Source: Selaginella moellendorffii
Taxonomy: Eukaryota; Plantae; Lycopodiophyta
DNA: 64,000 nt
Assembly (NCBI RefSeq): GCF_000143415.4
Contig: NW_003314309.1
Location: 124,001 to 188,000, forward strand
Reading direction: 5' to 3'
The position numbers were made by a program, and so were the translations under genes. Under the pieces are notes generated by a model that worked only from the letters and a program-made list of their open reading frames with translations, had not been told where the DNA came from and made no database searches. Below are positions 20,861 to 52,515 of the stretch, one piece after another. The stretch's first letter is position 1; every line of letters begins with the position of its first letter.

Positions 20861-20874
20861 TACGGACTCGCAGA

Positions 20875-21165: not shown

Positions 21166-23706
21166 ATGGCCATGTCTCTCGCGGATTTGCTGCTGCCTTT
21201 GTTTCTACTCGTCTTTCTCACAAGATCCCGGTCACAGTGCCCCACAAATCCATCCGCAATCGTGAACGACACACAGGTTCTTCTCTCTCTCCGTGACAGG
21301 CTTGGCATCAAAGTGTGGAACGAGACTGCCGATCCAAGAGCATGGCGGGGAGTGGAGTGGAGCTCGGACAACCAAGTGGAGGGCCTCGCTCTGTCCAGGT
21401 TTAATCTCTCGGGAGTTTTTCCTGCCACCTGGGCCGAGCTTCCATCGCTGGCTCGCCTGGACCTCTCGCAAAACGGCCTCTCCTCGCTGGAAGTCCCTTG
21501 CAAAAATACGCAGCTCAACCTCCTCAACTTGAGCTCCAATTCCCTGCAAGAGTTCCCCGGAAATCTCTCCAACCTCAAGAGTTTGGAAAGCCTGGACCTC
21601 AGTGGGAACTTCTTAACAGTGGCCGGACTCCCAAAGTTTAGCTTGACGCTGCGATCGCTCAACCTGTCCATCAACAACTTAACTGGGAGCTTTTCCATTG
21701 GTGGTAACCTGGGACTGGAGGCACTGGAACTCTCGCAGAACGGACTCAGCGGCTCCATTCCAGAAACTTTCGGGGAGATGACGAACTTGACGCGCCTGGA
21801 CATATCGTATAACAGGTTTAGAGGAGATCTACCCGATATTTGGAGCAAGAACTTGGAGCTCAGGTACATGCGTATCTCCAACAATTCGCTCCATGGTGGT
21901 TTGCCACCGAGCTTGAGAAGGCTACGCAAGCTCTCTGTTTTACGCGCTGCATACAACTCTCTCTCCGGGCCACTGGAGCTGGAAGATGGCAACTTTGCAA
22001 GCATCGAGGTTTTGAACCTCGGGCTAAACGGGTTTAGCGGAACGATCCCGGCTACGCTGGGAAGCTTGAGGAACTTGAAGATCCTGGTTCTCACGGGGAA
22101 TCATTTTAGTGGCGCCATACCACTGGAGCTTGGAAACTGGTCGAACATCAGAGAGATATGGCTTGACAGCAATAACTTGACTGGAACAATCCCAGGCGAG
22201 CTCTCGAAGCTCTCGCATCTCCAGAGGGTGGTTCTCACGGGGAATCGTTTTAGTGGCGCCATACCGTCGGAGCTTGGAAACTGGTCGAACATCAGGGAGA
22301 TATGGCTCAACAGCAATAACTTGACTGGAACAATCCCAGGCGAGCTCTCGAAGCTCTCGCATCTCCAGAAGCTGGTTCTCACGGGGAATCGTTTTAGTGG
22401 CGCCATACCTCCAGAGCTTGGAAACTGGTCGAACATCAAAGAGATATGGCTCGATAGCAATAACTTGACTGGAACAATCCCAGGCGAGCTCTCGAAGCTC
22501 TCGCATCTCCAGCAGCTGGTTCTCACGGGGAATCGTTTTAGTGGCGCCATCCCAGGCGAGCTCTCGAAGCTCTCGCATCTCCAAAGGGTGGTTCTCACGG
22601 GGAATCGTTTTAGTGGCGCCATACCTCCGGAGCTTGGAAACTGGTCAAACATCAGGGAGATATGGCTCAACGGCAATGATTTGACTGGAACAATCCCAGG
22701 CGAGCTCTCGAAGCTCTCACATCTCCAGCAGCTAGTTCTCAGCAGTAACGACATCGGTGGGGAGCTCCCTTCCGGACTCTCCAACTGCACTGAGCTCGTC
22801 GTTCTCTGGCTGGGGCAGAACAAGTTCTCTGGAAATCTCCCTGACAGCTTCGGGAATTTGAGCCGCCTGCTCCTTCTGTCGCTTTCCAGCAACGATCTTG
22901 TCGGTTCAATCCCGGCCATATTGCAAAACATGTCGTCTCTGCAGTTCCTCTTCCTCTCAAACAACAGCTTCAGCGGCTCCATACCGGACTGGCTTCCCAG
23001 GCTCACGAACTTACGAGCCATGGACTTCTCGGTTAACAGGTTCTCTGGGGAGATGCCGGAAAGCATTGGCCGACTGTTTGCCAACGTCCAGCTTTACAAC
23101 AAGAACAAACGGTCTGTGATGATTCAAACCACGCGAGGACTCCTCTACAACGGCTTCGCCTTCCCGACCTCCATAGACTTCTCCTTCAACCAGCTGACTG
23201 GAAGCATTCCAGCTGCCATTGGCGACCTCTACAAGCTCCAGGTGCTGCACCTGAGCCACAACCAGCTAACAGGTCCCATTCCCGAGTCCCTGGGGAAGGC
23301 AAGGAATCTCTCCTGGGTGGCGCTCGCGAGCAATCGTCTCAATGGCTCCATACCATCGTCCGTGGCGGACCTCTCGTTTCTCACCATCTTCGACGTCTCC
23401 AACAACAGCCTGGTGGGACGGATACCTGACAGCCCGCAACTCTCGTCCATGGACGCGGCTCTCTTCGCTGGGAATCAGCTCTGTGGCTTGCCACTGACCA
23501 ACACCTGTTCGAGCACTGCTATGCCGCCACATAAGCTTAGAACAGAGGGACAAGGTGGTAGCGAACAGGACCAAAGAGAGGTGATAACACTTGTCAGCGT
23601 TGCCATCTTCGTGGCAGCCTTCTTCAACGCGTTCTTCTGGACCTACTTTGCGGCAAACCGCAGAGCTCATTCCCAGCTCTGTGGATGCTGGCAATCAAAT
23701 CTCTAG
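21166..23706 (+). CDS. LRR receptor-like protein (Cf-like RLP), copy 1, apparently intact, 846 aa
   Basis: Signal peptide, LRRNT, >25 plant extracellular LRRs (LxxLxLxxNxLsGxIP), island region (ANVQLYNKNK...FAFP), final LRRs, GNxLCG cap, TM helix (VITLVSVAIFVAAFFNAFFWTYF), short tail, no kinase; intronless. Confidence 0.93.
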   Translation: MAMSLADLLLPLFLLVFLTRSRSQCPTNPSAIVNDTQVLLSLRDRLGIKVWNETADPRAWRGVEWSSDNQVEGLALSRFNLSGVFPATWAELPSLARLDLSQNGLSSLEVPCKNTQLNLLNLSSNSLQEFPGNLSNLKSLESLDLSGNFLTVAGLPKFSLTLRSLNLSINNLTGSFSIGGNLGLEALELSQNGLSGSIPETFGEMTNLTRLDISYNRFRGDLPDIWSKNLELRYMRISNNSLHGGLPPSLRRLRKLSVLRAAYNSLSGPLELEDGNFASIEVLNLGLNGFSGTIPATLGSLRNLKILVLTGNHFSGAIPLELGNWSNIREIWLDSNNLTGTIPGELSKLSHLQRVVLTGNRFSGAIPSELGNWSNIREIWLNSNNLTGTIPGELSKLSHLQKLVLTGNRFSGAIPPELGNWSNIKEIWLDSNNLTGTIPGELSKLSHLQQLVLTGNRFSGAIPGELSKLSHLQRVVLTGNRFSGAIPPELGNWSNIREIWLNGNDLTGTIPGELSKLSHLQQLVLSSNDIGGELPSGLSNCTELVVLWLGQNKFSGNLPDSFGNLSRLLLLSLSSNDLVGSIPAILQNMSSLQFLFLSNNSFSGSIPDWLPRLTNLRAMDFSVNRFSGEMPESIGRLFANVQLYNKNKRSVMIQTTRGLLYNGFAFPTSIDFSFNQLTGSIPAAIGDLYKLQVLHLSHNQLTGPIPESLGKARNLSWVALASNRLNGSIPSSVADLSFLTIFDVSNNSLVGRIPDSPQLSSMDAALFAGNQLCGLPLTNTCSSTAMPPHKLRTEGQGGSEQDQREVITLVSVAIFVAAFFNAFFWTYFAANRRAHSQLCGCWQSNL
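22069..22740 (+). repeat. Near-identical 144-bp (two-LRR, A/B) tandem repeats inside RLP copy 1
   Basis: Alternating ...VLTGNRFSGAIPxELGNWSN / IREIWLxxNNLTGTIPGELSKLSHLQ units, one unit shortened by 72 bp. Confidence 0.9.
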
Positions 23707-26065
23707 CTCGTCCACCATGTTGCTGCCGTCCTTTCTACCTTCCAGTTTGTAATCCATCACGACTGCTTGATGAAGTGAACTCTTCTTATCCGCTTTCAAG
23801 GCCGCCTCCTGTATAGTCTTGAGCTTATCATGATCCTCCCACAGCCCCGCGCTCCGGTAGATGCTCGCCAGCAGAACGTACGCAGCCGAGTCATTCTCGT
23901 CGATCTTCGTCAGTGCCTCGAACGCACTTCCACTTACAGCAGGCCCCGAGGACGCTCCTCCAAACCACAGCATCCGCTCTCAAAGGCATGCTCTCGAGGA
24001 CTTTCACGGCCTCTTCCAGTCGGTTAAGAGATCCACCAAGCTGCTGTAGTGATGAATCCCGCAAAAAATGCCAGAGTCCGGGTCCATTGCCTGGAAAAAC
24101 TCCCTGCCTCGTTCAACTAGGCCGCCGTGGCTGCAAGCAATGATGACCGAGACAAACGTGATTGCGTTTGCTCGCACGCCATCTTCTCGCATCTCACGAC
24201 AGGCTTCGAACATGCGCGACGTGTCACCCTGTTGGCCGAATCCTGTGATCAGTGCATTCCAGGCGACGATATCTCGGACTGCCAGAGATCCAAACAAGTG
24301 CTCGCACTCATAACTCCGCACTTCCTGTAGAAGTTTACTCCCCACAACTTGATCGTCTTCCAGCCCACGCCTGTAAAGCTCAACCTGGATTCCTTCCAGC
24401 TAGGCCGTAAGTGCTACAAGAGTCCGAGAGGTTGGAGCACAGTCCACTCCAAGAGTTCCAGCCCGAGCTCACTCTCACCGTTGTCTATATATCCCTGTAT
24501 CGAGCTCGTCCAAACGACAACGTCCCGGCTAGGCATGCGTTTGAAAACTGCTCGAGCTTTCACCATATCTCCACACTTGGCATACATATCCACCAAGCTG
24601 CTCCCAGCGTCCAAACTTCGCGGCGAGAGAATGAATCTCCATCCCCTTTTCTAGGCTCTGGATTCGCACTAGCTTTCCATCTTCTCGCGGAACAGGTGGC
24701 TCGGACGCTGAAAGGTGGACGCAGGCCATGAGCGCAGCAACAAACGTTCTCTCGTCCGGATCGTTCTCCCGAGCCATGCCAAAGAACAGCTCCAAGGCCA
24801 GCTTGCTGTCTCCACTTACATCGGCCAGCCATGCCATCGAAGACCTTGCGAGCTTCCTCTAGCTTCTCACACTTCGCGTACATATCGATCAGAGTGTTCC
24901 CCACGAACACGTCCTCACAGCACCTGCTGTTTGAAGCTTCACCGTGGATAGCCACCCCGGTTTCCAAGCTCTTTCTCTTCACGAGTTTGCCGTCGACATC
25001 CACCGCTTCTTCTCGCATTGCCGAGCTCGCACAGGCGGCAAGCGCAGCAACACACGTCCGAGAGCTTGGACAGCACCCAGATAGCTTCATATCTTCGAAG
25101 AACACGAGAGCCAGCTCGCTTTCCCCGTTGTCCACAAAGCCTTGTATCAAGCTCGTCCAGAGCACGACATCACGATGAGGCATGCTCTCGAAAACCATCC
25201 GCGCGTCGACCATGCTCCCACACTTTGAGTACCTGTCACTTGGCTGCTCCCCACGAAGATATCTCCACAGCAGTGGCTTTTCACAGCTCCATCGTGAACA
25301 GCGAGCTCCTTCTCCAGGCTCTTCGTCTTCACCATCTTTTGGTGGCCTCCTCTTTCACTGCTAGATTCGCACAGCCCTTGGCAGCAGCAACGAAAGTCCG
25401 AGAGTTTGGCGAGCAGCCCATCTTCCGAAAGAACTCGAGAGCGACCTCGCTTTCTCCATTCTCTACGTAGCCCAGTATCAACGCGTTCCAGGAGACCACG
25501 TCTCGCTGTGGCTCTCATCGAAGACCGATCGAGCATCGGGCATGATGCCGCACTTAGCTCGAGAGGAAAACGTCTTCGCTGCAAGACGGTCCCATCTGCT
25601 TGGCTTGAGAATGGATGCCTCTGCCGGTCTCGAGACTAGCCTCCTTGACGAGCTTCCCATCGACCAAAACAGCGTCTTCCTTCGCCGCGAGGCTGCTACA
25701 AGCCTTTGCCGCGTCCTGGAGTTTGGCTTGCAGCCCGACCGCCTGGCTTGCATCCTCTCGAAGAGATCCAGAGCCACATCGCTCTCGCCATTGGAGACGT
25801 AGCCCAGCATCAAGGACATCACGTTTGGGTGAAGAATGCTGTCGAACAGTCCTCCATGCTGCCGCATTTCGCGTACATGTCCACCAGCGCATTGACAACA
25901 AGCTGCTTGTTCTCCGCCGCCTGGCCGTGGATCGCCCAGGCGCAAATTGCCCTTGCGCAAATCCCTTGTGACCTTCAACGCCGACACCTGCTGATCGGGC
26001 GCCCGCGGCGGCGCTGCCGAAGGAGCGAATGCCGGTGCGGCGCATCGAATCGCTGCCATCACCAA
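23695..26065 (-). pseudogene. PLS-class (E-type) PPR protein pseudogene, copy 1
   Basis: Fragments LVDMYAKCG..ARxVFxxMPxRDVVxWTSLI, ITFVSVIIACSHGGLVERG, E-domain AAYVLLASIY spread over several frames; multiple frameshifts. Confidence 0.9.
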
Positions 26066-26199
26066 GTCTCATCCATCGCAAGAACCCTAAAAATTTGCTA
26101 GCAACATGGAAATTCAATCAAGGCCGTCGATTCAAGAATATCTGACGGTTGGAATGAATCGGGGATGGAAATGCTCGGCCTCCGAATGCTCGATGCTGA

Positions 26200-26660
26200 G
26201 GTACTCAGGAAAAATCGCCCTGTACAACCCAGCGTAGCCTTGGGTGCGAACAATGTGCCTCAGCGCGCTCGCAATCCCAGGCTTGTAAGCCGGTGTCCAT
26301 CTCCGGTCGCCCTCCGAGTTAAGTCGATCGGAAACACCGCTGAAAACAGGAACTATGGCGATCAAGCGTAATCGCTCTTGAGACTCTTACCTGTTGAGGC
26401 AGCGATTCCTGCTACTCCACCGGAGATCAAGCTCGTCACCATCCTACTCGGGCCTGAAAGTAACCATGCAATGCCAGGAGGCCTAAGCATGTCAAAACTG
26501 TGTTTACCAATGCGATGGTGCTCTGTGCCTGTAAAGCTTTTCCAAAAATTTCTCACTCTGAAACTAAAAATAATCCAACTTTGAGCGTTCCAGTAGTTGT
26601 AGAGAGTGTCATACAAGCAGAAGTTTATTGCAATCGTTGGGCCTATGGCAGGAGTCAAGT
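26200..26660 (-). pseudogene. Mitochondrial carrier (SLC25) family gene fragment
   Basis: IGPTIAINFCLYDTL, LISGGVAGIAAST, YKPGIASALRHIVRTQGYAGLYRAI motifs in separate small exons; further-deleted copies at ~41040-41370 and ~55200-55540. Confidence 0.75.
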
Positions 26661-28682
26661 CTGTGGCATTTGGCAGGGAGGAAAACCAATACCAAAAGCG
26701 TCGGTCAGAGTTCCTTATAAAGGCTAAGAAAGCTCTCCTGTTGATGGATTGTGGAAAGCGTGTGATAGATGTGGACGCACAGCAACATCTACACGCAAGA
26801 ACACAAAAGCTGTAAAGGGAACAACTAACAACAAAGATCACAAAGCTCAAGGTGAGGAAATTCAGGAGAAGATTCCAGAACAAGATCCTGAACATGTAAC
26901 CACCTTGCAGGTTCCAAACTGACAGGTGTCAAACCAGTGTAACGTGAACATGACCCAGCAGGAGCAGTCTCCAGCATCCCCACCGCACACAGCAACACCA
27001 ACACAACTAGCTCTCAATGCCGACACCGACAACATGCTACATCACGGCAAACACCACAGTTGAGAGCATCCCGAGCAAGAGTGATGCTGCAAGCCTGAGC
27101 TTACACTGGATCTTAAGCTTGGCATTTCTCCAGTTTGTGGACAAAATGCAATGTCTCCAGTCAACACCATAGATGCCAATACCAGCAAATTTTGCAAGGC
27201 TTTTCCACGACAAGCAGATGAGCATTTTCATGTGAGACAAAGTCCAATCAACACCTTTGTCTACCAGCCCCTAGATGTGAAGTTCACGAAGATCCAGAAC
27301 CATATTTTCCAGCTCAAGAGGAGCATTCAAGGTACAATTTTCTAGGAATTTGTATGCACAAAGACTTAGCACATGAATAAAGAACTCCCCAAGGAGAATG
27401 CAGAGCTTCACAATGAGATCTGACAACTCAAGGTGAAGCAGCTATAGGGATAGGGTGCGCTACAACAGAAGAACAAGTTCAAGAATGAGCTCTCTGGAGT
27501 CATAGTAACAATAAAACAGCCCAATGCTATGGAGAAATGAGAGCTTCAAAATGAAACTCAACTCAGTTATGGGAGAAAGTGGAGCATAGAAAATCAACGT
27601 TATATTTAGAAACATCATCCTAAGTCTTGAAATTTAAATCTTAAGACTGGCAGTTGCCAGAACTTATTAAGGAGGTGAGTTAACACTCAAACTCTATCCC
27701 TTTCTTTTGTATTCCAACTTTCCATCATCAATGCACATCTATTTGTGCAAAATCTACAGTACTCAAGTGATGTTAAGTTTATCTTTGCTCATGACTTCAA
27801 CAAAAGCCTTCATAGAAATTGAAGGACTCAAGTCATTCCTTTTTTACTTTTTATATGTTTATTTGTGTTTAACTGAAGCAAAATGCAAAATCAAGTCAAA
27901 CAAGTGTAGTAGTAAGCATCCACTTTACTCTTACCTTCTTTTATCTTTCACTCTTATTTTCTTTTCCTCTTTCTTTTTTTTCTAGTACAAGCTTTTAGCA
28001 TACAGACTTTTACCCAAGTTTCTAGGAATGGCTTGTTTTAACATTTAAAGGAATGATTGCAAAACATATAAAATTTTAGCATTTAAATTGGGATGGATAT
28101 TTGTCGTTTCTTTGGTATACATATATCATAGGGTATAAAGTTCCATTGGTGCTTCACTTTATAAACTTTTATGTGGTCATTATTTGATACTACTAATGGA
28201 GTTGAGTTTACCTTCGTGATTGCTATAAAATGCCAATACTAAGTCTTGGGATCAACATTTGATGAGTATTTTTCCATTCATTCAAGTGGAGTTTATTGAG
28301 CATTTAAGCTATGTATAAGTGGGATAATAACAACACAACAACTTCCATCATCGTCCACCAATGGAGTATAAAGTGGATGATTTGGTGTTAATCCATTTTC
28401 CTAATGTTACAATATATGGTTTGTGTAAGGGGCTCTTTATTCAGTGGAAGAGACTATATTAAGTGTTTTGGTAAGTTAAACTGCATGTTTATAAAGTTTG
28501 GCAAAACATTCAATAAACTAATCCTCCAGAAATTATATATATGCAATAACTTAAATGCTTTGTATAAAGGGATCAAACACTACCTATAATCCACCAGTGC
28601 CTCCTTCTGATGTTCCTCTAGATCCTAGTCTCTCAACTTGAAAACCTTAACTACCTTTCATCCTTCTAAAAGAATAAGATAA

Positions 28683-28800
28683 TATGAGGTCTAAGTGTAT
28701 AGCTATGATATTGTATATAAATATTAGTATAATTTTCAAACCACTCACTTTTGTATATAAACTATGGTTTTTGGGCTAATTAAGATGCATATTTCTATAT
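28683..28800 (+). repeat. Degenerate copy of the short gypsy LTR found at 2830-2984
   Basis: tatgaggtctaagtgtatagctatgatattgtatat..atattag and aaactatggtttttgggctaatt match the reverse complement of 2830-2984. Confidence 0.6.
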
Positions 28801-29247
28801 ACACTAAGAGTGCTACTTAAACTATAAGTGAGGCTAGAAAATAAACCCTTTTATGGCATCTTTTTTAATATTAGATCAAGAGAGTAATAAATAACTCAAT
28901 GAAGTTATCAGTCTTTATACTTTTTCTTAGTGAAAATCTTATAACTTAATATACATATCTAATCAATATAATTCATTGGGAGTAGGTAAAAATACCATAA
29001 TATAACTAGTAAATTTTAGAAATATAATAAATTTACTTTTAAATAGGACAGAAAAAAATTAAAAAAAGAATGGATAAAAGTGAAAATACAAGTGATAGAG
29101 AAGAAACCATTGATATTTTATCCACTTGAAAAGTTCTTCACCACTTAAGAAATAATAAGCTTAAATAGAATATTAATTATATAGTATTTTAATTCCTTTT
29201 GAAAAATTAGATATCCTCAATGTTTTTAAGAGGAGAAATTTAGAAGC

Positions 29248-29430
29248 TGTAAGCTCCTGAATTTAGAATTCCCAGAAGGTCATCTAGCCTAGTACTATTC
29301 AAACCCAAGAACATTTAATACAAAATATCCCAAAACTTTTAATCGATTGGAAAAAAAGGTACACTCTTATTTATAGGCCTTTTCCTTTTATATTTGAACC
29401 CTATGAATTATCTCTCTCTTTGGTTATTAA
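29248..29430 (-). mobile_element. Second, eroded 5S-containing Cassandra-like LTR
   Basis: Colinear with 17512-17706 (tgtaagctc...ttcccagaaggtcatctagcctagtactattcaaacccaaga...tatatttgaacc); differences mostly C->T/G->A. Confidence 0.8.
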
Positions 29431-29699
29431 GAATCTACTACACTTCTTTGCAAATTCATGCCTTTGAGAATGGAAGTTGAGAGCAATAGCTCTCCAGAAA
29501 GCCCTGCTCTTTTGACACCCTACCCCTTGGGTTGAACCTAGCCGGAGCAAATTGAACCTGCCAAATATCAATTAACATATAGTGCAATTCCCTTAACCAA
29601 CCAACAATATAGACTGTTTCTTGAGTCATTTTTTTTGGTTGCATTTTAAGTTACCAAATGGTATTACTTAAAAAACAAGCAAGTATATTTCTAGGGGCA

Positions 29700-30160
29700 A
29701 TTTGTAATGCATGTGGTTTTTACCTTTTATCTTATAGTGATTTACTATAAGATAAAAATGAAGTGGAACATAAACCCTCTATGTGCCACATGTCATCCAA
29801 AGGACTTTGAGTTTCAGGGCTTTGGGCCAATAGTGCCAAACTCTTAAGTATGGACCCAAGGAGTGAAGGTATTATAGCACAGAGTGACTTGAAACAGTCC
29901 TAGAGTATTTAATATCCCAATGCTAAGACTAACATATAAAATAAAGCCAAATGGAATTTAACATTATTTCAACATACTAATGGCATAATACAAGGATATA
30001 AATACTCCACCAACTAACATCATATGAAACTTAAGCTTAAACTCAAGCCAAATACAAAACAAGGACAAACACGCAAGCAAGAGCTAAATTATACCTCAAG
30101 TTAACCAGCCATGCCCAATCTACCCACTATCCTTATTATATATATGGAACCCCTATAACA
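29700..30160 (-). mobile_element. LTR-like fragment (homolog of 16700-17225) abutting the MSH3 3' end
   Basis: Colinear similarity with 16700-17225; MSH3 homology stops at its edge. Confidence 0.65.
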
Positions 30161-30165
30161 CCGAA

Positions 30166-33100: not shown

Positions 33101-33543
33101 CGAAACTTGTATCCCACCTCGACCATGAGAAGGATGTCTGGGAATTTCTTCTTGAGCTCCACAATCTGCTGCTCCAGAGGAGTAAGCTTCTCCTTCCCTG
33201 ACGGCGGCTTTCCATAAAAGGAGGAATTTCCACCACCGCCATCCCTGTCCCCCTCTCCAAGAAGAACATCTACAAACTTTCTACGCCTGTCTTTAATCGC
33301 TTCCCCCGATACTCCACAATCGGCATCCTTCCCATCGCCCGACCCGGCGTCTACATCTAAATTCAAGCACCGTTTCTTACTCGCGCTGGCCGCATTCTCG
33401 GCTGATCGCCTGAGATGATGCGGCGATGGCCACACAAGTGTGGGAGCCCGCGATGCATCGGTCTCACCTCGCTTGAAGAAGCTGGGGATGATCGCCTGGC
33501 CCTTGGCGGCGGCAGCGCCCTCGTCCTTCTTTCTCTTTCCCAT
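30166..33543 (-). pseudogene. MSH3: DNA mismatch repair protein MSH3 (MutS-beta subunit), 11 exons, frameshifted and C-terminally truncated
   Basis: [34 protein letters not shown] (K rather than F, typical of MSH3), KQTETAAIKAHG, FSRDLSALYTKAT, Walker A and DELGRGTSTHDG. Exons 33543-32548, 32488-32327, 32273-32109, 32056-31958, 31893-31696, 31634-31425, 31382-31251, 31196-30947 and three more. Frameshift near 31184; stop at 30166 before the C-terminal dimerization helix-turn-helix. Confidence 0.92.
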
Positions 33544-33599
33544 TCAAAAACTTATAAACCCTAAGATTCTTGCCTGGCCCAACAATATTATGGATAACC

Positions 33600-34570: not shown

Positions 34571-34579
34571 AATCAAAAT

Positions 34580-40230: not shown

Positions 40231-40424
40231 TCTTATAAACATCCAGCAAGTAACTGTTATATATAATAAAAGTTTAATACAAAGTTTTGTTAGTCTGATT
40301 TTATTTAAAAAATTTATAACAAAATTTTAAACTGAAACTTTTTAAAGTAATTTAAAATATCTTAAATACTATATTATAATAATATTTATGTTTAATGTTT
40401 TAGAAAAATGATGAAGCATGATGC

Positions 40425-40930
40425 CGCATGATGGCGCACTTAGCTCGAGAGGAAAACGTCTTCGCTGCAAGACGGTCCCATCTGCTTGGCTTGAGAATGG
40501 ATGCCTCTGCCGGTCTCGAGACTAGCCTCCTTGACGAGCTTCCCATCGACCAAAACAGCGTCTTCCTTCGCCGCGAGGCTGCTACAAGCCTTTGCCGCGT
40601 CCTGGAGTTTGGCTTGCATCCTCTCGAAGAGATCCAGAGCCACATCGCTCTCGCCATTGGAGACGTAGCCCAGCATCAAGGACATCACGCTTGGGTGAAG
40701 AATGCTGTCGAACACGCGGCGGGAATCCTCCATGCTGCCGCATTTCGCGTACATGTCTCCCCAGCTGCTTGCTCTCCGCCGCCTGGGCGTGGATCGCCCA
40801 GGCGCAAATTGCCCTAGCGCAAATCCCTTGTGACCTTGGGCGCCCGCGGCGACGCTGCCGAAGGAGCGAATGCTGGTGCGGCGCATCGAATCGCTGCCGT
40901 CGCCAAGTCTCATCCATCGCAAGAACCCTA
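40425..40930 (-). pseudogene. PPR pseudogene, partial copy 2 (5' part only)
   Basis: Homologous to 25540-26090 and 54555-55090. Confidence 0.88.
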
Positions 40931-43274: not shown

Positions 43275-43830
43275 AACATCCAACTGCTAAGACAAATTGG
43301 TCCATCTCTTTCACTACCCTCTTCTCCTCACATAAACTCCTTAGCCTCAAGCATGGCTTTGGTATATAGAGAGAATGGGCCAGCCTTGTGTCTTGGTATG
43401 CCAACTTTGTAGCCAACTTCCACAAGCCTTCCCATGCACGCAACCGGAATGAGAAAGCAGCCAATTTTCTTAGAATTTGCTTATCATAGCCATAGCTTTC
43501 TCACTGCTAGCATTCCAATATTCTGCCACATCCTCTCCAAAACATTGAAACTTTGTATCCCACCTCAACAATGAGAAGAGTGTCTAGAAATTTCTTCATG
43601 AGCTCCACAATCTGCTGCTACAGAGGAGTAAGCTTTTCCTTTCCTGATGGCAACTTTCCATCACAAGAGGAATTTCCATTGGAAGCATCTTGTCCCCAAT
43701 AACATTTACAAATTTTCTATACCTGTGGTTGCAAGAGGATTTAGATGTAGAAGCCAGGTTAGGGTATTGATTGGCTGCATTCTCAGCCGGTCGTTTAAGA
43801 TGACACAACGATTATTCTTGAAGCAGCAGT
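43275..43830 (-). pseudogene. MSH3: MSH3 exon 1 degenerate fragment, copy 2
   Basis: Colinear with 33600-34140. Confidence 0.8.
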
Positions 43831-43916
43831 GCCTAGTATATTTATTATAAGATTCTTATATTATTTTATTAGAATAATATTATTTGTAGGTGAACCATAT
43901 ATTACAGCTTACTGAG

Positions 43917-44085
43917 ATGGAAACTTTTTGGCTAATTATTTCCCTGTTGCATTTGTTAGTTATTGCAAGAGTGAAATTTCTGCAATATTTATCTTTAGAC
44001 TCATTGGTAGATTATAGAAATAACAATTACATTTTAAACACTTATGCAAAGGCTAATTTTCCTCCCTATGGAAGGAAGATTTTTT
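43917..44085 (+). pseudogene. GDSL lipase 5' fragment, copy
   Basis: DSLVDYRNNNYILNTYAKANFPPYGR. Confidence 0.8.
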
Positions 44086-45025
44086 AGGAATTTAAACATT
44101 ATCTACTAATTTAAGAGCATTAGATTATATACAAAATAGTTTTACTTATATTTTCTTCACCATTATAGTTTTAAAGATAAAATAATCCTTAATTTAGGTA
44201 GAGAATTAAATAAAAATAACACTATTCTTTCATAGATATAAATTTTTTTTATCACACCAAATTAATAGTAAACATTTCTTCTATAAACCTCATATAATGT
44301 TTTACTATGAAAGTTCATTTAAGTAAATTTATTTTAAAATTTTTGAATTCAGCTTTATCAAGCTATGTATATATTGGATTTTTCTTAATTAATCTTTGGT
44401 TTTTCCTTGATGTTGGTTTAAATAAATATATTAGTAACTGAATGGGAAGAAACTATATTTTGTTGTTTAAATTTTTATTACAATAACTTGAAACATTTTA
44501 TTAAAAAAATTTGAAATTTCTATAGTAGGATTTGGATCAGTTAACTCTTTGAATAATAAATTTATTTTATAAATAAAATTATTTACCATATAATCTTGAA
44601 TAAAATCTAATGAATAATTAAATAATATATTAACTATTTATTTTCAAAAAGACTTCTTACTTGAAAGGGCTCTTGTTTTTTTCCTTTTATATTGGAATGT
44701 ATTTGCAATATTTCCTGTTTTATTTAAAGCCTTCTTCTTTTTGGTTGCCATATCTCTTTTGAAAATTAAATCATAAAATTATTTTCAGAAATTTTAAGTT
44801 AACTTCTAATCCCAATCTCCTAATAATAGTGCTAAATCTATGCAATTTATCGTTCATCCAATGCTAATGCCATCCTAATCACGATATTAATGGCTTCCTA
44901 ATTGCAATCCTAATCCATGTAATCAGTATTAATTATACTCCTAATTGCAAGGTAATGGCACAAACCTAATCACATCCTCTCAAGGATTCAAGGTTTTTTT
45001 GATTCAAGCTTTTTGTTCTTTCAAT

Positions 45026-45097
45026 CAAGCATTGCTGAGAGTTGGAATTCAAGGAGTAACGGTGAGCAATGTTCGTGGTTTAGGCACTCAAGGTGGA
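45026..45097 (+). pseudogene. Isolated fragment of nitrogen regulatory protein PII (GLB1-like)
   Basis: QALLRVGIQGVTVSNVRGLGTQGG resembles the PII motif ALL..GIRGVTVSDVRGFGAQGG; no other PII exons nearby. Confidence 0.75.
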
Positions 45098-47329
45098 GCT
45101 GTGTTTTCTTTCTTTTTTCCCTGTGGAGAACAAAAGCTTCCAGGAGAAAAGAAACCAGTTCTTACCCTTGATACTTGGGAGTCTCCAAGGTCTAGAAAAA
45201 AAAGAGAGAGAAGCAAAGAAATTGGTATCACTGCGTTACTAGTCAGATCCGAGCTCCAAAGAATCCGTCCACATCAGCAATCCAAAAGAAAAGAGAAAGA
45301 AAGCTCAAACCTTTCTGCAGCATGTTAAGATCCTTGAGCCCTCCAAGAGCGGTGCATCTATCCCTGCCCTCTCCAAATCCTGGCGCCTACCACACCCAAT
45401 GGTGTGTGGGACGAGGCTATTGCCACTGGCCAGCATCGCTCGGTACAGAATCTCGCCTTAGCGGCCAAGAAGATTTCCCATTTAGCCCTAAATTCTGACA
45501 CCTCTTCATCTGGCAATTGGATGATTTTATCTGACTCATTCATTTTGACAGCATTTAATGAGCCAGCTGAGGCAAATGATATACACTTCTAGGAGTCACT
45601 GAGGTATAGAAGTATCTGTGCTGATATCCTTGATCACAGAACTTTGGATATCTAAAACTATTCCCATCCAAAAGTTTTACTTGATCAATCACCATGGATA
45701 GCATATGATTTTCCTCTCCTTCCTTAATATTGAACCACTGAACTTTAAAAATAATTCTCTTGAATGATCTAAACTTTACCTCATAAATATAAAAGGTATC
45801 TATAATAATAAGAACGAATAACCCAAACCCCTGCAGCCGTCTGGGGCAGCCTCGGAAGCCATGGTTCTCAACAAGGGGAGGCCAGCTTAGGCTTTGGCCA
45901 GGGCCGGTGGCCATGGTTAGCGGGAATATTGGCTCAATGTTGTGGCGGCCAATGGGTGGGATGCATGCGTGGCAGGGAAGGGAAGAGGGCGTGGTGACAT
46001 GTGTTATGCCATGCACTCCTAGGGCTCCATTGGTGCTCTGGTCGGACACGGTTGTGTGGGCATTTCCGGGAGAGCCTGTGCATGGTAAGTAACAGGGGCG
46101 GGTAGAATGGTAGTCGGGCACACAATCCAGGCTCCTCTTGGGATCAACTCAGGACTGTGAGAGGCAAATTGGCTCATCTCCAACTCAGCAAAGCTTTGAT
46201 CCCTGTTTGCCATTGCCTCACGAGCTCTTTGGCCTGTAGGAAAGCAATTATCAAGGACACTCCCTCTTCATCCCTGGATTCTCTCGAGGAATCCCTTGTT
46301 GCTGGGCCTGGTGAGGGATTGTTGTTTCAGCACATGCTCGGGATCAACTCCATTTGTAGGAACCTGTTTTGAGTTGACGTAGGGCTGTCGAGTGGCTGTG
46401 CCAGCCAACACTGCTCCTGAAGTTTTGGAAATCTGACATGGCACTGATGTCTGGGTTCTCTCGAAAGAGAAGGAGAGAAGCAGAAGGTGCCACCGCAAGC
46501 ATCCCGCCAACTGTTGGGAAAGGATGGGAAAGCTGGCATCAATCGATTTGTTGCAGTAGCCCATGGATAAAACTGTAGTCCATGGATAGATGTATGACAT
46601 TATAGTCAGCATTCCAGAATCAATCCTAAGATAAATTTGTTTAGTATGATCATGTTAAACTAACAAAATTCACCTACATTGTCTGGAGTTCAGTCAAGCC
46701 TACAAATGATGGAACTGGCTGAGGAGAAAAGGAGTTGTTTCCAATGCTTCTGTTATGCATACACATGCATCAGGTAAACTCCAAGTTAAGAAGAAATATT
46801 ACATTAGTTGGAGAGCTTTCAACCTGCTTAGATCAGGTAACGTTCCAGTAAAAGCATTATCATTGATGTGTCTGTAAATGAAACAAAACTTGAGTGCAAA
46901 GTAGTTACCATATTAGCTATTTACATTTCAAAGAGGGTTGATATCCGCCCCAAACTGCTCGGCAATGATCCAGCAAATCGATTTTTGTCAAGTCTCCTGA
47001 AAATACATCTCTGGAGAAGTTCCCGATGAAATTGGAAACTTTTCCAAGCTGACCATCATGTAAGTCATTGATGGCTAGAATACAATCTCGTGTAATAGAG
47101 CAGTTATTGTCCAGTAACCTGAAGGACAACAGGTCCAAAAACCTCCATGAAAATGAGAAAAATACGTACAAGTGCCTGAGTTCAGGTAAGAAATATATTT
47201 CTGGTGCGTCCACCTCTTTGTAAACCACCCAGCATTTGCTGGGCAAGTACTCGTAAAAAACTAAGATAGATCAAAATACATACCTGGAAAATCAATATGA
47301 GGTTGTTGTGGATTCCTTAACGTAATTAT

Positions 47330-50030
47330 AATGCTGTCCATTGTTTTCTTATTTGCATCAATTTGAGAAACTCTAAAATGCTTTCCATTAATCTAATATA
47401 CTGTATAACTCATGGCCTAAAATTTAAAACTAATTAATGATTAATTAATGTTAATTATGACTTTGCATCCATTACCCAAATCCTTAAAAACATTTGATAT
47501 TGATTCACCTCTTTGAATAGTATATTGTATGATTTCATATATAATAGCCATAATAGGTAATAGTGGTAGCTATTTTAAATTTTCAGGAATCTATTAGTTT
47601 GGATGGTCAATAACATATTGCATTCTTGCATTATCTCTTTCAATTCTTGCTTGTTGATACTTTTGAAGGATAAGTTGCATTTCCTCTTCATTAAAGTAAA
47701 TATATAGAGAACTATTTTCATATGCTTCTTAACTAAGTTGAATTTGTTTTCCTAGATGCTACAATCGAATACTACTATAATCAAATGGAGATATAAACTA
47801 TGAAATACTTAAGCAAATTAGAACTAAAATATTATGCATATAAAAACTCTTTCTTAATAGCAGACCTTCAGCTATAGATCTTCAAGTTTTACTTTTTGTC
47901 TTACCAAAGATTTTAAAACCCTTAAATAACACTCAATAAAAAATATATTTCAGCTAGTTCTAGGACCAACCATCTTTAACTCATCAATTAACTATACTAA
48001 TAAATGAACTTGTGTTGTCATAGCTGTTGTAAATAATGTTGCTTCCAATAAACACACATAAATGATAGACTTTTCTTTCATAATAGGTTTCAAAGATCTA
48101 TCTACTTCTTGAGCAGTTTAAAATCTAATTAAAATTAAAATTAATTGAATTAAAAAAATTAAATCAATTATTACCATACAACTTCTCCAAGAAAATATAT
48201 TGCATCCTGTAATTGAGGTGTTGTGTTTCCCATTATAAAAATGAGATAAAAATCCTACTAAATATGTTAATTTACGTTTTAGTAAATTTAGAAACTTATT
48301 TATAGTAAATAAAGCCAATTGTTTTCATACCTATTAAATTACCTTTCTCATCGACACAATTTGAAATTCAGTTCCATATGTTTTAAGCACTTTAAAAGCC
48401 TCTATATTATCAATAAATAATTTATTTTAATAATTTGTTAATGTCAAAATTCCATGCTTAATTTTTCCATCACATCACAACCATATGTTTTACTTTATTC
48501 TGCGCATAACTAAGTCTTTTCTAGTACTTAATTCATCAATTTTACCAGTAATAGTTTTATATATAGTTTGAAAAACATTCTTAAATATATGCATGTAATC
48601 CTTTAAAAATGCTACTGGCAACTTATAAAAATATAGAAGTTGATAAAATGTGAATATAACCATTTCATACTATTAGGTAACAATATTTGATCTTCTTGTC
48701 TAACCAAATAATAATATGTTGCCTAACGTTTTGGAGTCATTTGTCCTAGTATTGGTCAAATATAATTATGACCATTAAATAAACTAATTAAAATTTAATT
48801 TTAATTTATGTTTTAGAAATAATAACTAAAATCTTATATTCTATTAGTAGACCTAAATGGATGATCCATAGGTAAGAAACACCAATATCCAATATATATA
48901 TGCATATTTATAAACTTCGTGACTATATTCCAAGGATCTAGGTCCACAGTTTAGGTAAAAGTATTTTCCTATTAATTTGAACTCCTGAATAAAATCATAA
49001 TCCAAGAAAATTATGAATAAACTATCACATTGCTTCTCTAAGCTTAAAAAACTGTTAACCCTCTAACTTAGAATTATCTTTGCATGGCACTCCATCCCAT
49101 AATTGTTTTAACTCTTCCAAAAATAATAACCAATAAATATTAAGTACCTTAGGAAGTTTTGGGCCTAGAAAAATTATAGATATAAATATTTCAATTTATT
49201 TTTTTAAACTAATACCTAGTATAATCATAATAAGGAATATAAATGAAGGCTTAATTGCTAGAGTTGGTGGTATATTATTATTAATTGCAACAATTGCCTA
49301 ACATGAATATATTTTTGCCATTAATTTTGTTGGAGAAAGATCATCTGCAGCCATACTAAGATGTATATTTCTTGGATCTACTGCAAAATCTGGATAATCA
49401 TCTTCGAATTTTATTTTAAGTTGAACCATCTGCAGGCATTTTCATTATTCCATTAGTGGATTGATGATAAAATGATAAGTTATATATTGTGTTATTTCTC
49501 TACATTGAAATTATTATTGAAGTCAAGGTATAATAGAGAAATAATGCATTATTTTCTCAGGTATATAATTGTTAAAATCTGTGTGCTTGCTAGCAATAGA
49601 AATTTGACAAAATTAAAGGTCCATATTCTCCTTATGAAATAACATAAAGTCATTGATGCATAAATCAATCTTTTTATAGGTAAGTCCATTATGTTTAGTG
49701 ATATTTACCACTTCCTTATATATATTTGAAAATGTTTATTTGTAGGAAACATTTTAGTAACAGTTTAAAAGTTGTAAATTGCAACTCTAATTAGCAACAT
49801 ATATGAGCTTATCTAGCTTTAAAGAATATGTTACTACAAATTATTATTTATATTTTAGTTGTAAAGGACAACTATAATTTCCAACTTAAATTTGAGTAAG
49901 TATAAAGCTATCACTTAAATTTTGTAACTAAAGCCAATTTGCTACTAACATTAAATTGAGTTGATTACAACTTAGATTTCCAACAAACACAAAAAAATTG
50001 TTGGAAAAACATATCATTATAATGCTTTTA
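47330..50030 (-). mobile_element. CACTA transposase relic and subterminal region preceding RLP copy 3
   Basis: Homologous to 18050-19650, 35250-36500 and 20580-20850. Confidence 0.7.
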
Positions 50031-50400
50031 CGGACTGGCAGAAGTCAAGTCTAAGTCTTCACCTGTCGAAGTCCACATTCTATCCACCGTGGCCAAAACA
50101 TCACCACCAAAAAAAATTGTGCAAAAATCTATGTTATGTAATATAGTTGATAGTCCAGTATACCAATGGCAAATCCCAAGTCCCCCATTTATTGACTAGC
50201 AAGGCTTTCATCAAGGCCCTTTGCTAGTCAATAAAGTCAATAAAGTATTTTTACAATGGTAAATCCCAAGTCCCCCACTTTATTGACTAGCTCAATTGAC
50301 TCGAAGTCAAGTGTGCCAGGAATTGATTAGCAAATGTGCGTGTAAACTCTGCAAAAAGAAGAACCTCATCTCGCACGTTCACTCTTTGATGTTCTGATCC

Positions 50401-52515
50401 ATGGCCATGTCTCTCGCGGATTTGCTGCTGCCTTTGTTTCTACTCGTCTTTCTCACAAGATCCCGGTCACAGTGCCCCACAAATCCATCCGCAATCGTGA
50501 ACGACACACAGGTTCTTCTCTCTCTCCGTGACAGGCTTGGCATCAAAGTGTGGATCGAGACTGCCAATCCAAGAGCATGGCGGGGAGTGGAGTGGAGCTC
50601 GGACAACCAAGTGGAGGGCCTCGCTCTGTCCAGGTTTAATCTCTCGGGAGTTTTTCCTGCCACCTGGGCCGAGCTTCCATCGCTGGCTCGCCTGGACCTC
50701 TCGCAAAACGGCCTCTCCTCGCTGGAAGTCCCTTGCAAAAATACGCAGCTCAACCTCCTCAACTTGAGCTCCAATTCCCTGCAAGAGTTCCCCGGAAATC
50801 TCTCCAGCCTCGAGAGTTTGGAAAGCCTGGACCTCAGTGGGAACAACTTAACAGTGGCCAGACTCCCAAAGTTTAGCTTGACGCTGCGATCGCTCAACCT
50901 GTCCATCAACAACTTAACTGGGAGCTTTTCCATTGGTGGTAACCTGGGACTGGAGACACTGGAACTCTCGCAGAACGGCCTCAGCGGCTCCATTCCAGAA
51001 ACTTTCGGGGAGATGACGAACTTGACACGCCTGGACATATCGTATAACAGGTTTAGAGGAGATCTACCCGATATTTGGAGCAAGAACTTGGAGCTCAGGT
51101 ACATGCGTATCTCCGAAAATTCGCTCCAGGGTGGTTTGCCACCGAGCTTGAGAAGGCTACGCAAGCTCTCGGAATTACGCGCTGCATACAACTCTCTCTC
51201 CGGGCCACTGGAGCTGGAAGATGGCGACTTTGCAAGCATCGAGGTTTTGCACCTCGGGCTAAACGGGTTTAGCGGAACGATCCCGGCTACGCTGGGAAAC
51301 TTGAGGAACTTGAAGATCCTGGTTCTCATGGGGAATCGTTTTAGTGGCGCCATACCTCTGGAGCTTGGAAACTGGTCGAACATCAGAGAGATATGGCTCG
51401 ACAGCAATAACTTGACTGGAACAATCCCAGGCGAGCTCTCGAAGCTCTCGCATCTCCAGAAGCTGGTTCTCAGGGGGAATCGTTTTAGTGGCGCCATACC
51501 TCCGGAGCTTGGAAACTGGTCGAACATCAGAGAGATATGTCTCGACAGCAATAACTTGACTGGAACAATCCCAGGCGAGCTCTCGAAGCTCTCGCATCTC
51601 CAAAGGGTGGTTCTCACGGGAAATCGTTTTAGTGGTGCCATACCTCCGGAGCTTGGAAACTGGTCAAACATCAGGGAGATATGGCTCAACGGCAATGATT
51701 TGACTGGAACAATCCCAGGCGAGCTCTCGAAGCTCTCACATCTCCAGCAGCTAGTTCTCAGTAGTAACGACATCGGTGGGGAGCTCCCTTCCGGACTCTC
51801 CAACTGCACCGAGCTCGTCATTCTCGGGCTGGACCAGAACAAGTTCTCTGGAAATCTCCCTGACAGCTTCGGGAATTTGAGCCGCCTGCTCCTTCTGTCG
51901 CTTTCCAGCAACGATCTTGTCGGTTCAATCCCAGCCATATTGCAAAACATGTCGTCTCTGCAGTTCCTCTTCCTCGACAACAACAGCTTCAGCGGCTCCA
52001 TACCGGACTGGCTTCCCAGGCTCACGAACTTACGAGCCATGAACTTCTCGGTTAACAGGTTCTCTGGGGAGATGCCGGAAAGCATTGGCCGACTTTTTGC
52101 CAACGTCCAGCTTTACGACCAGAACAAACGGTCTGTGATGATTCAAACCGAGCAAGGACTCGTCTACAACGGCTTCGCCTTCCCGACCTCCATAGACTTC
52201 TCCTTCAACCAGCTGACTGGAAGCATTCCAGCTGCCATTGGCGACCTCTACAAGCTCCAGGGGTTGTACCTGAGCCACAACCAGCTAACAGGTCCCATTC
52301 CCGAGTCCCTGGGGAAGGCAAGGAATCTCTCCTGGGTGGAGCTTGCGAGCAATCGTCTCAATGGCTCCATACCATCGTCCGTGGCGGACCTCTCGTTTCT
52401 CACCATCTTCGACGTCTCCAACAACAACCTGGTGGGACGGATACCTGACAGCCCGCAACTCTCGCCCATGGACGCGGCTCTCTTCGCTGGGAATCAGCTC
52501 TGTGGCTTCACATAA
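50401..52515 (+). CDS. LRR-RLP copy 3, open through the whole ectodomain (704 aa) but lacking the TM helix (secreted variant or young pseudogene)
   Basis: Paralog of copy 1 with 3 fewer LRRs; 38-bp deletion after GNQLCG shifts the frame (CGFT*), leaving the TM-coding sequence out of frame at ~52560-52630. Confidence 0.8.
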   Translation: MAMSLADLLLPLFLLVFLTRSRSQCPTNPSAIVNDTQVLLSLRDRLGIKVWIETANPRAWRGVEWSSDNQVEGLALSRFNLSGVFPATWAELPSLARLDLSQNGLSSLEVPCKNTQLNLLNLSSNSLQEFPGNLSSLESLESLDLSGNNLTVARLPKFSLTLRSLNLSINNLTGSFSIGGNLGLETLELSQNGLSGSIPETFGEMTNLTRLDISYNRFRGDLPDIWSKNLELRYMRISENSLQGGLPPSLRRLRKLSELRAAYNSLSGPLELEDGDFASIEVLHLGLNGFSGTIPATLGNLRNLKILVLMGNRFSGAIPLELGNWSNIREIWLDSNNLTGTIPGELSKLSHLQKLVLRGNRFSGAIPPELGNWSNIREICLDSNNLTGTIPGELSKLSHLQRVVLTGNRFSGAIPPELGNWSNIREIWLNGNDLTGTIPGELSKLSHLQQLVLSSNDIGGELPSGLSNCTELVILGLDQNKFSGNLPDSFGNLSRLLLLSLSSNDLVGSIPAILQNMSSLQFLFLDNNSFSGSIPDWLPRLTNLRAMNFSVNRFSGEMPESIGRLFANVQLYDQNKRSVMIQTEQGLVYNGFAFPTSIDFSFNQLTGSIPAAIGDLYKLQGLYLSHNQLTGPIPESLGKARNLSWVELASNRLNGSIPSSVADLSFLTIFDVSNNNLVGRIPDSPQLSPMDAALFAGNQLCGFT

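What the first reader, a model, noticed from the sequence alone, without database searches (positions are those of the whole stretch)
21166..52515. LRR-RLP paralogs differ mostly at solvent-exposed LRR positions: diversifying immune-receptor cluster
Seen: copies 1/3/2 are near-identical in DNA, yet their amino-acid changes cluster in or next to the xxLxLxxN strand. Examples: RISNN/RISEN/RITNN, SVLRA/SELRA/SDLRA, VLNLG/VLHLG, VLTGN/VLMGN/VLRGN, VVLWLGQN/VILGLDQN/VGLSLNQN, FLSNN/FLDNN, QVLHLS/QGLYLS, WVALA/WVELA. The island region also differs (NKNK..TTRGLL vs DQNK..TEQGLV). Known: this is the signature of tomato Cf-type RLP clusters under pathogen-driven selection. Inference: an uncharacterised, fast-evolving pathogen-recognition locus in a seed-free plant.
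Basis: partly seen in the sequence, partly recalled or inferred. Interest (0 to 1): 0.75.

Follow-up and report, generated by a model that had tools for sequence, protein, structure and literature searches.

The report
Spikemoss kinase-less LRR receptor triplet
A spikemoss (Selaginella moellendorffii) DNA segment carrying a kinase-less leucine-rich-repeat surface receptor gene is present three times; the copies differ mainly on the predicted ligand-binding face, as in tomato Cf resistance genes, but only one copy is still intact.

Summary
Three LRR genes (96.6-97.3% identical DNA) lie in a triplicated 13-17 kb segment of S. moellendorffii scaffold GL377613.1. Outside the repeat array, 14 of 95 exposed LRR codons vary in amino acid against 13 of 354 other LRR codons (p 2.7e-4).

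A codon model I wrote gives omega 2.7 at exposed positions on the window branches (p 0.004). Background branches give 0.49 and convex-side control positions 0.78. With lineage-specific multi-nucleotide codon changes set to missing, omega is 2.0 (p 0.06). With all multi-hit codons dropped it is 1.1.

- Only copy 1 (846 aa) is intact.
- Copy 3 has a 38-bp deletion that stops translation before the membrane anchor.
- Copy 2 has an 11-bp deletion, a stop codon and a 3' truncation.
- LRR number differs through a two-LRR tandem unit: 9, 6 and 3 array LRRs, against 2 in paralogs elsewhere.
- The genes are truncated relatives of a same-genome BRI1/PSKR/PSY1R-type receptor kinase. They are not Cf-clade members, and the membrane helix has no GxxxG.

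Verdict: a young, partly decayed receptor-like cluster with a moderate signal of diversifying selection. It is a new member of a known kind. Expression and function are untested.

The parts
18042..35248 (.). Segment A of the tandem triplication (about 17 kb). It holds c1, a PPR pseudogene and a roughly 5-kb stretch (28560-33611) with MutS-homolog exons that segments B and C lack.
   Evidence: Self-BLAST blocks; MutS domains I, II, III and V in minus-strand ORFs.
21166..23706 (+). c1: intact intronless ORF of 846 aa. It has a signal peptide, 28 plant-type LRRs, a 27-residue island (residues 640-666) followed by 4 LRRs, a C-cap, an acidic juxtamembrane stretch, a membrane helix and a 16-residue tail. 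There is no kinase.
   Evidence: ORF; Pfam LRR families; LRR parsing; AlphaFold model with pLDDT 83.7 and TM helix 800-837. The PPR pseudogene on the other strand starts about 70 bp after the stop.
22075..22722 (+). c1 tandem LRR array: nine 24-residue LRRs built from a 144-bp two-LRR unit, in the pattern A B A B A B hybrid A B.
   Evidence: Tandem Repeats Finder period 144; unit listing.
23083..23163 (+). c1 island domain (residues 640-666). Five residues differ from c3 and no change is synonymous.
   Evidence: low model confidence at 640-665.
23779..26135 (-). PPR pseudogene of segment A. It is about 96% identical in aligned columns to the intact 862-aa PPR gene of locus L001 but is broken by about 25 indels, mostly deletions of 9-38 bp.
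   Evidence: tblastn frame changes; gap lists and alignment.
35234..48517 (.). Segment B (about 13 kb). It holds c2 and a 5' remnant of the PPR pseudogene (40416-40976, minus strand). The 3' part of the LRR gene and most of the PPR are missing.
37814..39104 (+). c2: pseudogene. It has an 11-bp deletion at 38207/38208, TGA at 38289-38291 (codon 163 of c1), only three array LRRs, and homology that ends at 39104 (c1 position 22899).
48002..62773 (.). Segment C (about 14 kb), holding c3 and a PPR pseudogene (52758-55144, minus strand). From 62257 the sequence again matches the start of a segment, so a fourth unit may begin at the window's end.
50401..52515 (+). c3: 704-aa ORF with an intact ectodomain carrying six array LRRs. 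A 38-bp deletion at 52508/52509 shifts the frame and gives a stop 7 nt later, before the membrane helix. The helix-coding DNA persists out of frame up to about 52700, with a further 10-bp deletion at 52655/52656.
51310..51741 (+). c3 tandem LRR array: six LRRs in the pattern A B A B A B.

Best explanation
This is a young tandem cluster in Selaginella moellendorffii. Each unit carries a kinase-less LRR receptor-like gene followed by a PPR pseudogene.

The LRR gene descends from a subgroup-X (BRI1/BRL-PSKR-PSY1R type) LRR receptor kinase by loss of everything after the membrane helix (shown by comparison with paralogs). After the segment multiplied, three things happened. The copies changed LRR number by unequal exchange within a two-LRR tandem unit. 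They exchanged sequence with each other. They accumulated amino-acid replacements preferentially on the concave beta-sheet face and in the island, faster than synonymous or neighbouring pseudogene sites. I read this as diversifying selection on ligand binding while the reading frames were still maintained (inferred from rates).

Decay followed. c2 is dead and c3 has lost its membrane anchor. c1, which keeps most ancestral surface residues, is the only complete receptor.

By analogy with island-plus-four-LRR receptors, c1 would bind a ligand on the concave face and island. It would recruit a SERK-type co-receptor through the last four LRRs, where a QxxS motif is present. It would signal through a partner kinase, because it has none itself. 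This mechanism is inference. Neither the ligand nor an immune role is shown.
For: Identity and source:
- The c1 and c3 ORFs occur exactly on GCA_000143415.2 scaffold GL377613.1.
- The triplication is shown by self-BLAST.

Descent from a receptor kinase:
- c1 is collinear from the signal peptide to just past the membrane helix with the 1056-aa kinase P0001.
- That protein's kinase is closest to BRI1 among solved structures. It is 55-56% identical to Selaginella BRL1 and 50-53% to PSY1R-named proteins.
- Two further kinase-less paralogs, each followed by PPR sequence, lie at L001 and L002.

Selection:
- Fixed-sites by clade codon model: omega is 2.69 at exposed positions on window branches, 0.49 at exposed positions on background branches, and 0.62 and 0.40 at other positions. 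The likelihood-ratio test gives p 0.0038.
- The result is stable over three topologies. Adding the island gives 2.84 (p 0.0011). Convex-side control positions give 0.78.
- Replacements at exposed sites, c1 versus c3, are 6.8%. Synonymous sites are 2.7% (p 0.0125) and the adjacent PPR pseudogene is 2.1% (p 0.0003).
- No small indel occurs in 2109 bp of the c1-c3 ectodomain, although the neighbouring pseudogene predicts about 8 (Poisson p 3e-4). Both frames were therefore kept while the surface changed.
- The derived surface states of c3 are absent from the three other known paralogs.

Structure and exchange:
- In the model, strands fall at LRR positions 3-5.
- Array LRR numbers are 9, 6 and 3 in the window against 2 elsewhere.
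- Shared-derived sites switch partner along the gene: c3+c2 at codons 154 and 193, then c1+c3 at 289 and 494-527.
Against: - The test rests on three short-branched copies and about 20 replacement events.
- Dropping the nine codons with two or more nucleotide differences gives omega 1.1. Setting only lineage-specific multi-nucleotide codons to missing gives 2.0, p 0.06. Two of c3's multi-nucleotide changes are TT to AA, which hints at a mutational process.
- Against AT-rich intergenic DNA between segments A and C (6.7% divergent), exposed-site divergence is not elevated.
- Most derived surface changes sit in the two copies that are now broken.
- Omega at other positions on window branches (0.62) cannot be distinguished from 1.
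- Sequence exchange violates the single-tree assumption of the model.
- No expression data were available.
- The membrane helix has no GxxxG.
Confidence: 0.55

Rival explanations
1. There was relaxed constraint and no positive selection. After duplication the extra copies drifted. Replacements collect at the least constrained LRR positions, and a few multi-nucleotide mutations push omega above 1 artificially.
For: Two of three copies are broken. Whole-gene omega is 0.73-0.95 between copies. Omega at exposed sites falls to 1.1 when multi-hit codons are removed. Omega at other positions on window branches is not distinguishable from 1. c3 carries tandem TT to AA changes at codons 149 and 258. 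Over longer distances, exposed positions run near neutral, not above it.
Against: Pure drift should spread replacements evenly, but 14 of 27 variable LRR codons fall on 21% of positions. The convex-side x positions, which are also weakly constrained, give omega 0.78. Exposed sites run about 3 times faster than synonymous and pseudogene sites. Three adjacent exposed codons (546, 548, 550) each carry a different residue in each copy. The ectodomain frames stayed free of indels while the neighbouring pseudogene gained 9.
Confidence: 0.25
2. The differences are patchy gene conversion from unsampled, older paralogs. They were imported as short tracts from family members that had diverged at hypervariable sites over a long time.
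For: The copies are mosaics: different pairs share derived states in different parts of the gene. The 3' part of c2 is 6.5-7.8% from both others, against 2-3% in its 5' part. The family has at least six members on three scaffolds. The PPR coding region is far more similar between loci than its flanks, which suggests ectopic exchange.
Against: None of the derived surface states of c3 or c2 occurs in the three paralogs available. Changes such as codon 598, where all three bases differ and the flanks are identical, would need tracts of a few bases. Synonymous differences do not cluster with them beyond what the small numbers allow.
Confidence: 0.12
3. It is an assembly artefact. Diverged haplotypes of one locus were stacked in tandem in this two-haplotype assembly, so the 'paralogs' are really alleles.
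For: The assembly is known to hold both haplotypes (my own recollection of the genome paper). L002 and L005 are such a pair, about 97% identical.
Against: Three units, and the start of a fourth, cannot be two haplotypes. The units differ by kilobase-scale structure: the MutS insert, the c2 truncation and the array size. A-C intergenic divergence is 6.7%, well above the 1.6% mismatch of the L002/L005 pair.
Confidence: 0.04

Closest known systems
Tomato Cf-2/Cf-5 and Cf-4/Cf-9 LRR receptor-like protein clusters
   Same: Both are tandem paralogs of kinase-less receptors with a signal peptide, extracellular LRRs and a membrane helix. Both have an island followed by four LRRs and hypervariable residues in the xxLxLxx strand. 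In both, LRR number varies through a super-motif of two nearly identical LRRs; Cf-2 and Cf-5 differ by six LRRs (PMC4030839, read). Here the counts are 9, 6 and 3 array LRRs.
   Different: Descent from the Cf/RLP clade is not shown. The nearest full-length relative is a same-genome receptor kinase. There is no GxxxG in the membrane helix (criterion from PMC10834447). The N-terminal cap lacks the usual cysteine pair, and Pfam LRRNT_2 was not hit. Only one copy is intact, and no recognised ligand or phenotype is known.
Truncated LRR receptor kinases, e.g. Arabidopsis RLP2/RLP3 as kinase-less paralogs of PSY1R (Man et al. 2020, PMC7318236)
   Same: Both are LRR-only genes that arose from a clade-X receptor kinase by loss of the kinase part. 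That paper counts 30 putative truncated LRR-RLKs in S. moellendorffii.
   Different: Here the truncated form has been multiplied together with a PPR gene. It shows LRR-array expansion and a concave-face replacement excess. I did not see either described for those cases in the passages I read.
LRR-RLK subgroup Xb receptors with island plus four LRRs (BRI1/BRL, PSKR1, PSY1R)
   Same: The ectodomain aligns end to end with BRI1, BRL2/3 and PSKR1 chains, including the island and last four LRRs. A QxxS motif sits in the position of the SERK-binding QxxT/S (PMC10834447). The paralog's kinase is BRI1-like.
   Different: The window copies have no kinase. The island is short, 27 residues by my parsing, against 36-38 in PSKR/PSY1R and 67-70 in BRI1. 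The end of the outer juxtamembrane stretch is acidic in the kinase-less copies but basic in the kinase paralog.

Membership tests
LRR receptor-like protein (architecture class) | Signal peptide plus extracellular plant-type LRR solenoid | tested here: met
   Hydrophobic N-terminus, 28 LRRs and Pfam LRR_8/LRR_1 hits. The model has pLDDT 83.7 and matches plant receptor ectodomains.
LRR receptor-like protein (architecture class) | Single membrane helix, short cytoplasmic tail, no kinase | tested here: met
   Met for c1 only: helix 800-837, a 16-residue tail, and the next gene starting about 70 bp after the stop. c3 stops before the helix. c2 is truncated.
Immune-type island+4LRR LRR-RLP clade (Cf-9, RLP23, RXEG1; criteria of Ngou et al. 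2024) | Island domain followed by exactly four LRRs | tested here: met
   The island is at residues 640-666, followed by LRR25-28.
Immune-type island+4LRR LRR-RLP clade (Cf-9, RLP23, RXEG1; criteria of Ngou et al. 2024) | QxxT/S motif after the last LRR (SERK contact) | tested here: met
   c1 reads QLSS at residues 758-761. c3 reads QLSP because of S761P. The motif definition was read.
Immune-type island+4LRR LRR-RLP clade (Cf-9, RLP23, RXEG1; criteria of Ngou et al. 2024) | Negatively charged end of the outer juxtamembrane region | tested here: inconclusive
   The last eight residues before the helix carry E, D and E against one R (net -2). The kinase paralog ends in RRK. This is weaker than the strongly acidic stretch described.
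Immune-type island+4LRR LRR-RLP clade (Cf-9, RLP23, RXEG1; criteria of Ngou et al. 2024) | GxxxG motif in the membrane helix (SOBIR1 association) | tested here: not met
   The helix contains no glycine, only AxxxA spacings. The criterion was read.
Immune-type island+4LRR LRR-RLP clade (Cf-9, RLP23, RXEG1; criteria of Ngou et al. 2024) | Constitutive SOBIR1 and ligand-induced BAK1/SERK binding | not testable with these tools
   Needs co-immunoprecipitation.
Truncated derivative of an LRR-RLK subgroup X gene | Collinear with a full-length receptor kinase paralog up to and past the membrane helix | tested here: met
   c1 against P0001: 86-91% DNA identity (BLASTN blocks) over the ectodomain, and shared residues just after the helix.
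Truncated derivative of an LRR-RLK subgroup X gene | The parent's kinase belongs to subgroup X | tested here: inconclusive
   The best solved match is BRI1 kinase. The highest identities are to lycophyte and liverwort LRR kinases, Selaginella BRL1 (56%) and PSY1R-named proteins (50-53%). No kinase tree was built.
R-gene-like cluster under diversifying selection | Replacement rate above the synonymous rate at solvent-exposed LRR positions | tested here: met
   Omega is 2.69, p 0.0038. It drops to 2.03, p 0.06, without lineage-specific multi-nucleotide codons, and to 1.11 without all multi-hit codons.
R-gene-like cluster under diversifying selection | Recognition specificity differs between paralogs | not testable with these tools
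   No ligand is known.

The most novel reading that the evidence does not exclude
Selaginella independently made its own class of variable cell-surface immune receptors. It did so by cutting the kinase off a BRI1/PSY1R-type receptor kinase and letting the copies diversify in LRR number and binding surface.
Probability: 0.2. Interest if true: 0.7.

Novelty: new member of a known kind. Interest (0 to 1): 0.45.

Why it matters
How lycophytes recognise pathogens is poorly known. If c1 and its relatives are real receptors, they would show that two hallmarks of resistance-gene clusters arose in an early vascular plant lineage from a hormone/peptide-receptor-type kinase, independently of the angiosperm Cf/RLP clade. 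Those hallmarks are tandem duplication with LRR-number change, and surface diversification followed by gene death.

The locus also gives a compact test case. It holds one intact gene, one anchor-less copy and one dead copy side by side, next to a pseudogene that serves as a neutral yardstick.

If the signal is only relaxed constraint, the finding is an ordinary decaying duplicate.

Tried and rejected
- A scan of genome contigs for paralogs was useless, because that collection holds only bacteria and archaea.
- I first treated the S. moellendorffii loci L001 and L002 as orthologs from another species. The exact look-up showed they are paralogs in the same genome, so they serve as outgroups only.
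- Exposed codons seemed to have a higher synonymous rate. That turned out to be mostly fractional synonymous steps assigned to multi-hit codons.
- Exact look-up of c1, c3 and SmB in the protein collection found nothing, so no source names were obtained.
- I tried to reach beyond the window's end to look for a fourth copy. The look-ups could not go there.
- The Foldseek search did not separate receptor subfamilies.
- PAML is not installed, so I wrote a fixed-sites by clade codon likelihood instead.
- The large HMMER representative search was not used, because no claim here rests on absence of relatives.
Full report
**What is there.** The window is S. moellendorffii assembly GCA_000143415.2, scaffold GL377613.1, roughly 124001-188000. 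The c1 and c3 ORFs are found there exactly.

Self-comparison shows a tandem triplication. The units start near 18042, 35234 and 48002, and a fourth start appears at 62257. Each unit carries an intronless LRR gene on the + strand, followed on the - strand by PPR sequence.

**The three LRR copies.**
- c1 (21166-23706) is an intact 846-aa ORF. It has a signal peptide, 28 plant-type LRRs, a 27-residue island, four more LRRs, a C-cap, a membrane helix and a 16-residue tail. An AlphaFold model (pLDDT 83.7) gives a regular solenoid with strands at LRR positions 3-5 and 10-13, a disordered island and a helix at 800-837.
- c3 (50401-52515) matches c1 over the whole ectodomain. It lacks 38 bp right after the C-cap 'LCG', which creates a stop 7 nt later. 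The helix-coding DNA follows out of frame and has a further 10-bp deletion.
- c2 (37814-39104) has an 11-bp deletion and a CGA-to-TGA change at 38289-38291, and it ends abruptly at 39104.

So there is one complete gene, one anchor-less ORF and one pseudogene.

**Checking the observation.** Pairwise identity is 96.6-97.3%. All quoted peptide differences are real, except that 'VLRGN' belongs to c3 unit 4 and not to c2.

I took positions 2, 3, 5, 7 and 8 of each LRR (first L of LxxLxLxxN = position 1) as the a priori exposed class. Outside the repeat array, 14 of 95 exposed codons are amino-acid variable among the copies, against 13 of 354 other LRR codons (p 2.7e-4). Inside the array, differences between units also sit mostly at those positions.

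**Selection test: data and tree.** Three paralogs from other scaffolds served as outgroups:
- SmA, the 1056-aa receptor kinase P0001.
- SmB, an intact 696-aa kinase-less gene.
- SmC, the frameshifted gene behind P0002.

The tree is (c1,(c3,c2)) against the three.

**Selection test: result.** PAML was not available, so I wrote a codon-likelihood model with two site classes and two branch classes. It covers 599 codons outside the array.

| Site class | Window branches | Background branches |
|---|---|---|
| Exposed positions | 2.69 | 0.49 |
| Other positions | 0.62 | 0.40 |

Fixing the first value at 1 costs 2ΔlnL 8.38, p 0.0038.

**Selection test: robustness.**
- The result is the same on all three resolutions of the window clade.
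- It rises to 2.84 (p 0.0011) when the island is added.
- Convex-side x positions used as a control give 0.78.

**Selection test: counts.**
- On the c3 branch, 11.8 of 17.8 LRR replacements are at exposed sites (p 5.5e-5).
- On c2 the figure is 7 of 11 (p 0.004).
- On c1 it is 3.5 of 8.5, not significant.

**Neutral yardsticks for c1 versus c3.** Exposed-site replacements are at 6.8%.

| Yardstick | Divergence | Test against exposed sites |
|---|---|---|
| Gene-wide synonymous sites | 2.7% | p 0.0125 |
| Adjacent PPR pseudogene | 2.1% | p 0.0003 |
| AT-rich intergenic DNA downstream | 6.7% | no excess |

In the 3' half of the gene, next to the 2%-divergent pseudogene, exposed sites reach 9.3%.

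**Weak points.**
- The signal leans on multi-hit codons. These are 239, 258 and 598 in c3, 550 in c2, and the triple-state codons 546, 548 and 550.
- Removing all nine such codons gives omega 1.11.
- Setting only the lineage-specific multi-nucleotide changes to missing gives 2.03, p 0.06.
- Two c3 changes are TT to AA, so a mutational contribution is possible.
- The copies are mosaics. c3 and c2 share derived states at codons 154 and 193, while c1 and c3 share them at 289 and 494-527. A single tree is therefore an approximation.
- Most derived surface changes lie in the two broken copies.

**Were c2 and c3 simply drifting?** The indel record argues against it.
- The PPR pseudogenes of segments A and C differ by 9 indels in 2340 bp, and flanking DNA shows 6-22 indels per kb.
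- The c1-c3 ectodomain has none in 2109 bp, where about 8 are expected (p 3e-4).
- c1-c2 has one in 1291 bp, where about 5 are expected (p 0.04).

The frames were therefore protected for most of the time in which the surface residues changed, and the disabling lesions look recent. The derived surface states are absent from the three other known paralogs. That gives no support to conversion from those, although unsampled donors remain possible.

**LRR-number variation.** A 144-bp unit encoding two LRR types (A and B) is tandemly repeated. The paralogs elsewhere have A B. c2 has hybrid A B. c3 has A B A B A B. c1 has A B A B A B hybrid A B. The 216-bp and 432-bp length differences between copies are whole LRRs. 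This mirrors the two-LRR super-motif and six-LRR difference of Cf-2 and Cf-5 (PMC4030839).

**Family placement.**
- c1 is collinear with the kinase paralog P0001 through the membrane helix and the first residues beyond it.
- P0001's kinase is closest to BRI1 among solved structures. By identity it is closest to lycophyte and liverwort LRR kinases, Selaginella BRL1 and PSY1R-named proteins.
- The ectodomain aligns end to end with BRI1, BRL and PSKR1 chains.

The window genes are therefore truncated subgroup-X-type receptor kinases. This kind of gene has been described, including in this species (PMC7318236).

Against the criteria for immune-type island+4LRR RLPs (PMC10834447):
- The island plus four LRRs is present.
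- The QxxT/S motif is present (QLSS in c1, QLSP in c3).
- The juxtamembrane end is mildly acidic.
- The membrane helix has no GxxxG.

I therefore do not file the genes as Cf/RLP-clade members. They work like them in architecture and in evolutionary pattern.

**Verdict.** The diversifying-selection reading is moderately supported but fragile. The 'Cf-type' label is an analogy, and the 'locus' is one live gene plus two casualties. Function and expression are untested. Earlier notes of this scan reported hypervariable LRR-Roco genes on other DNA of the same genome. This LRR-RLP-like cluster itself was not found among them.

Noticed in passing
window 23779-26135, 52758-55144, 40416-40976 (minus strand); L001:12177-14765: The PPR sequence behind each LRR gene is a pseudogene. 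It is about 96% identical in aligned columns to an intact 862-aa PPR gene on another scaffold, yet it is riddled with 19-25 indels, mostly deletions of 9-38 bp and many near 10 bp. The low substitution divergence (2-5%) is confined to the PPR coding region, while the LRR gene and the flanks are 7-20% diverged from that locus. A high deletion-to-substitution ratio, or ectopic exchange between PPR copies, might explain it. I did not resolve this.
   Followed up: partly
window 62257-64000: The last 1.7 kb again matches the AT-rich start of the repeated segment (18042, 35234, 48002). A fourth unit, with a fourth LRR copy starting roughly 0.6 kb past the window's end, is therefore possible.
   Followed up: partly
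window 28560-33611, minus strand: MutS-homolog exons (domains I, II, III and V) lie in a roughly 5-kb stretch present only in segment A. Segments B and C join the flanks within about 45 bp.
   Followed up: partly
window 4090-12906 and 961-2049: A 4.4-kb stretch is repeated head to tail at 99.9% identity (4090-8499 and 8496-12906). An ORF upstream has a retroviral-type aspartyl protease domain. This is probably retrotransposon-derived.
   Followed up: no
L002:16889-18979 versus L005 (GL377573.1): L005 is the other-haplotype counterpart of L002, about 97% identical over 16.8 kb. It shows no kinase-less LRR gene or PPR sequence where L002 has them, which suggests a presence/absence difference between haplotypes. 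That L002 gene is closer to the L005 kinase allele (94.8%) than to its own neighbour.
   Followed up: partly
window 39105-40415: About 1.3 kb of AT-rich sequence with no long match elsewhere in the window replaces the 3' part of c2 and most of its PPR pseudogene. Its origin was not determined.
   Followed up: no
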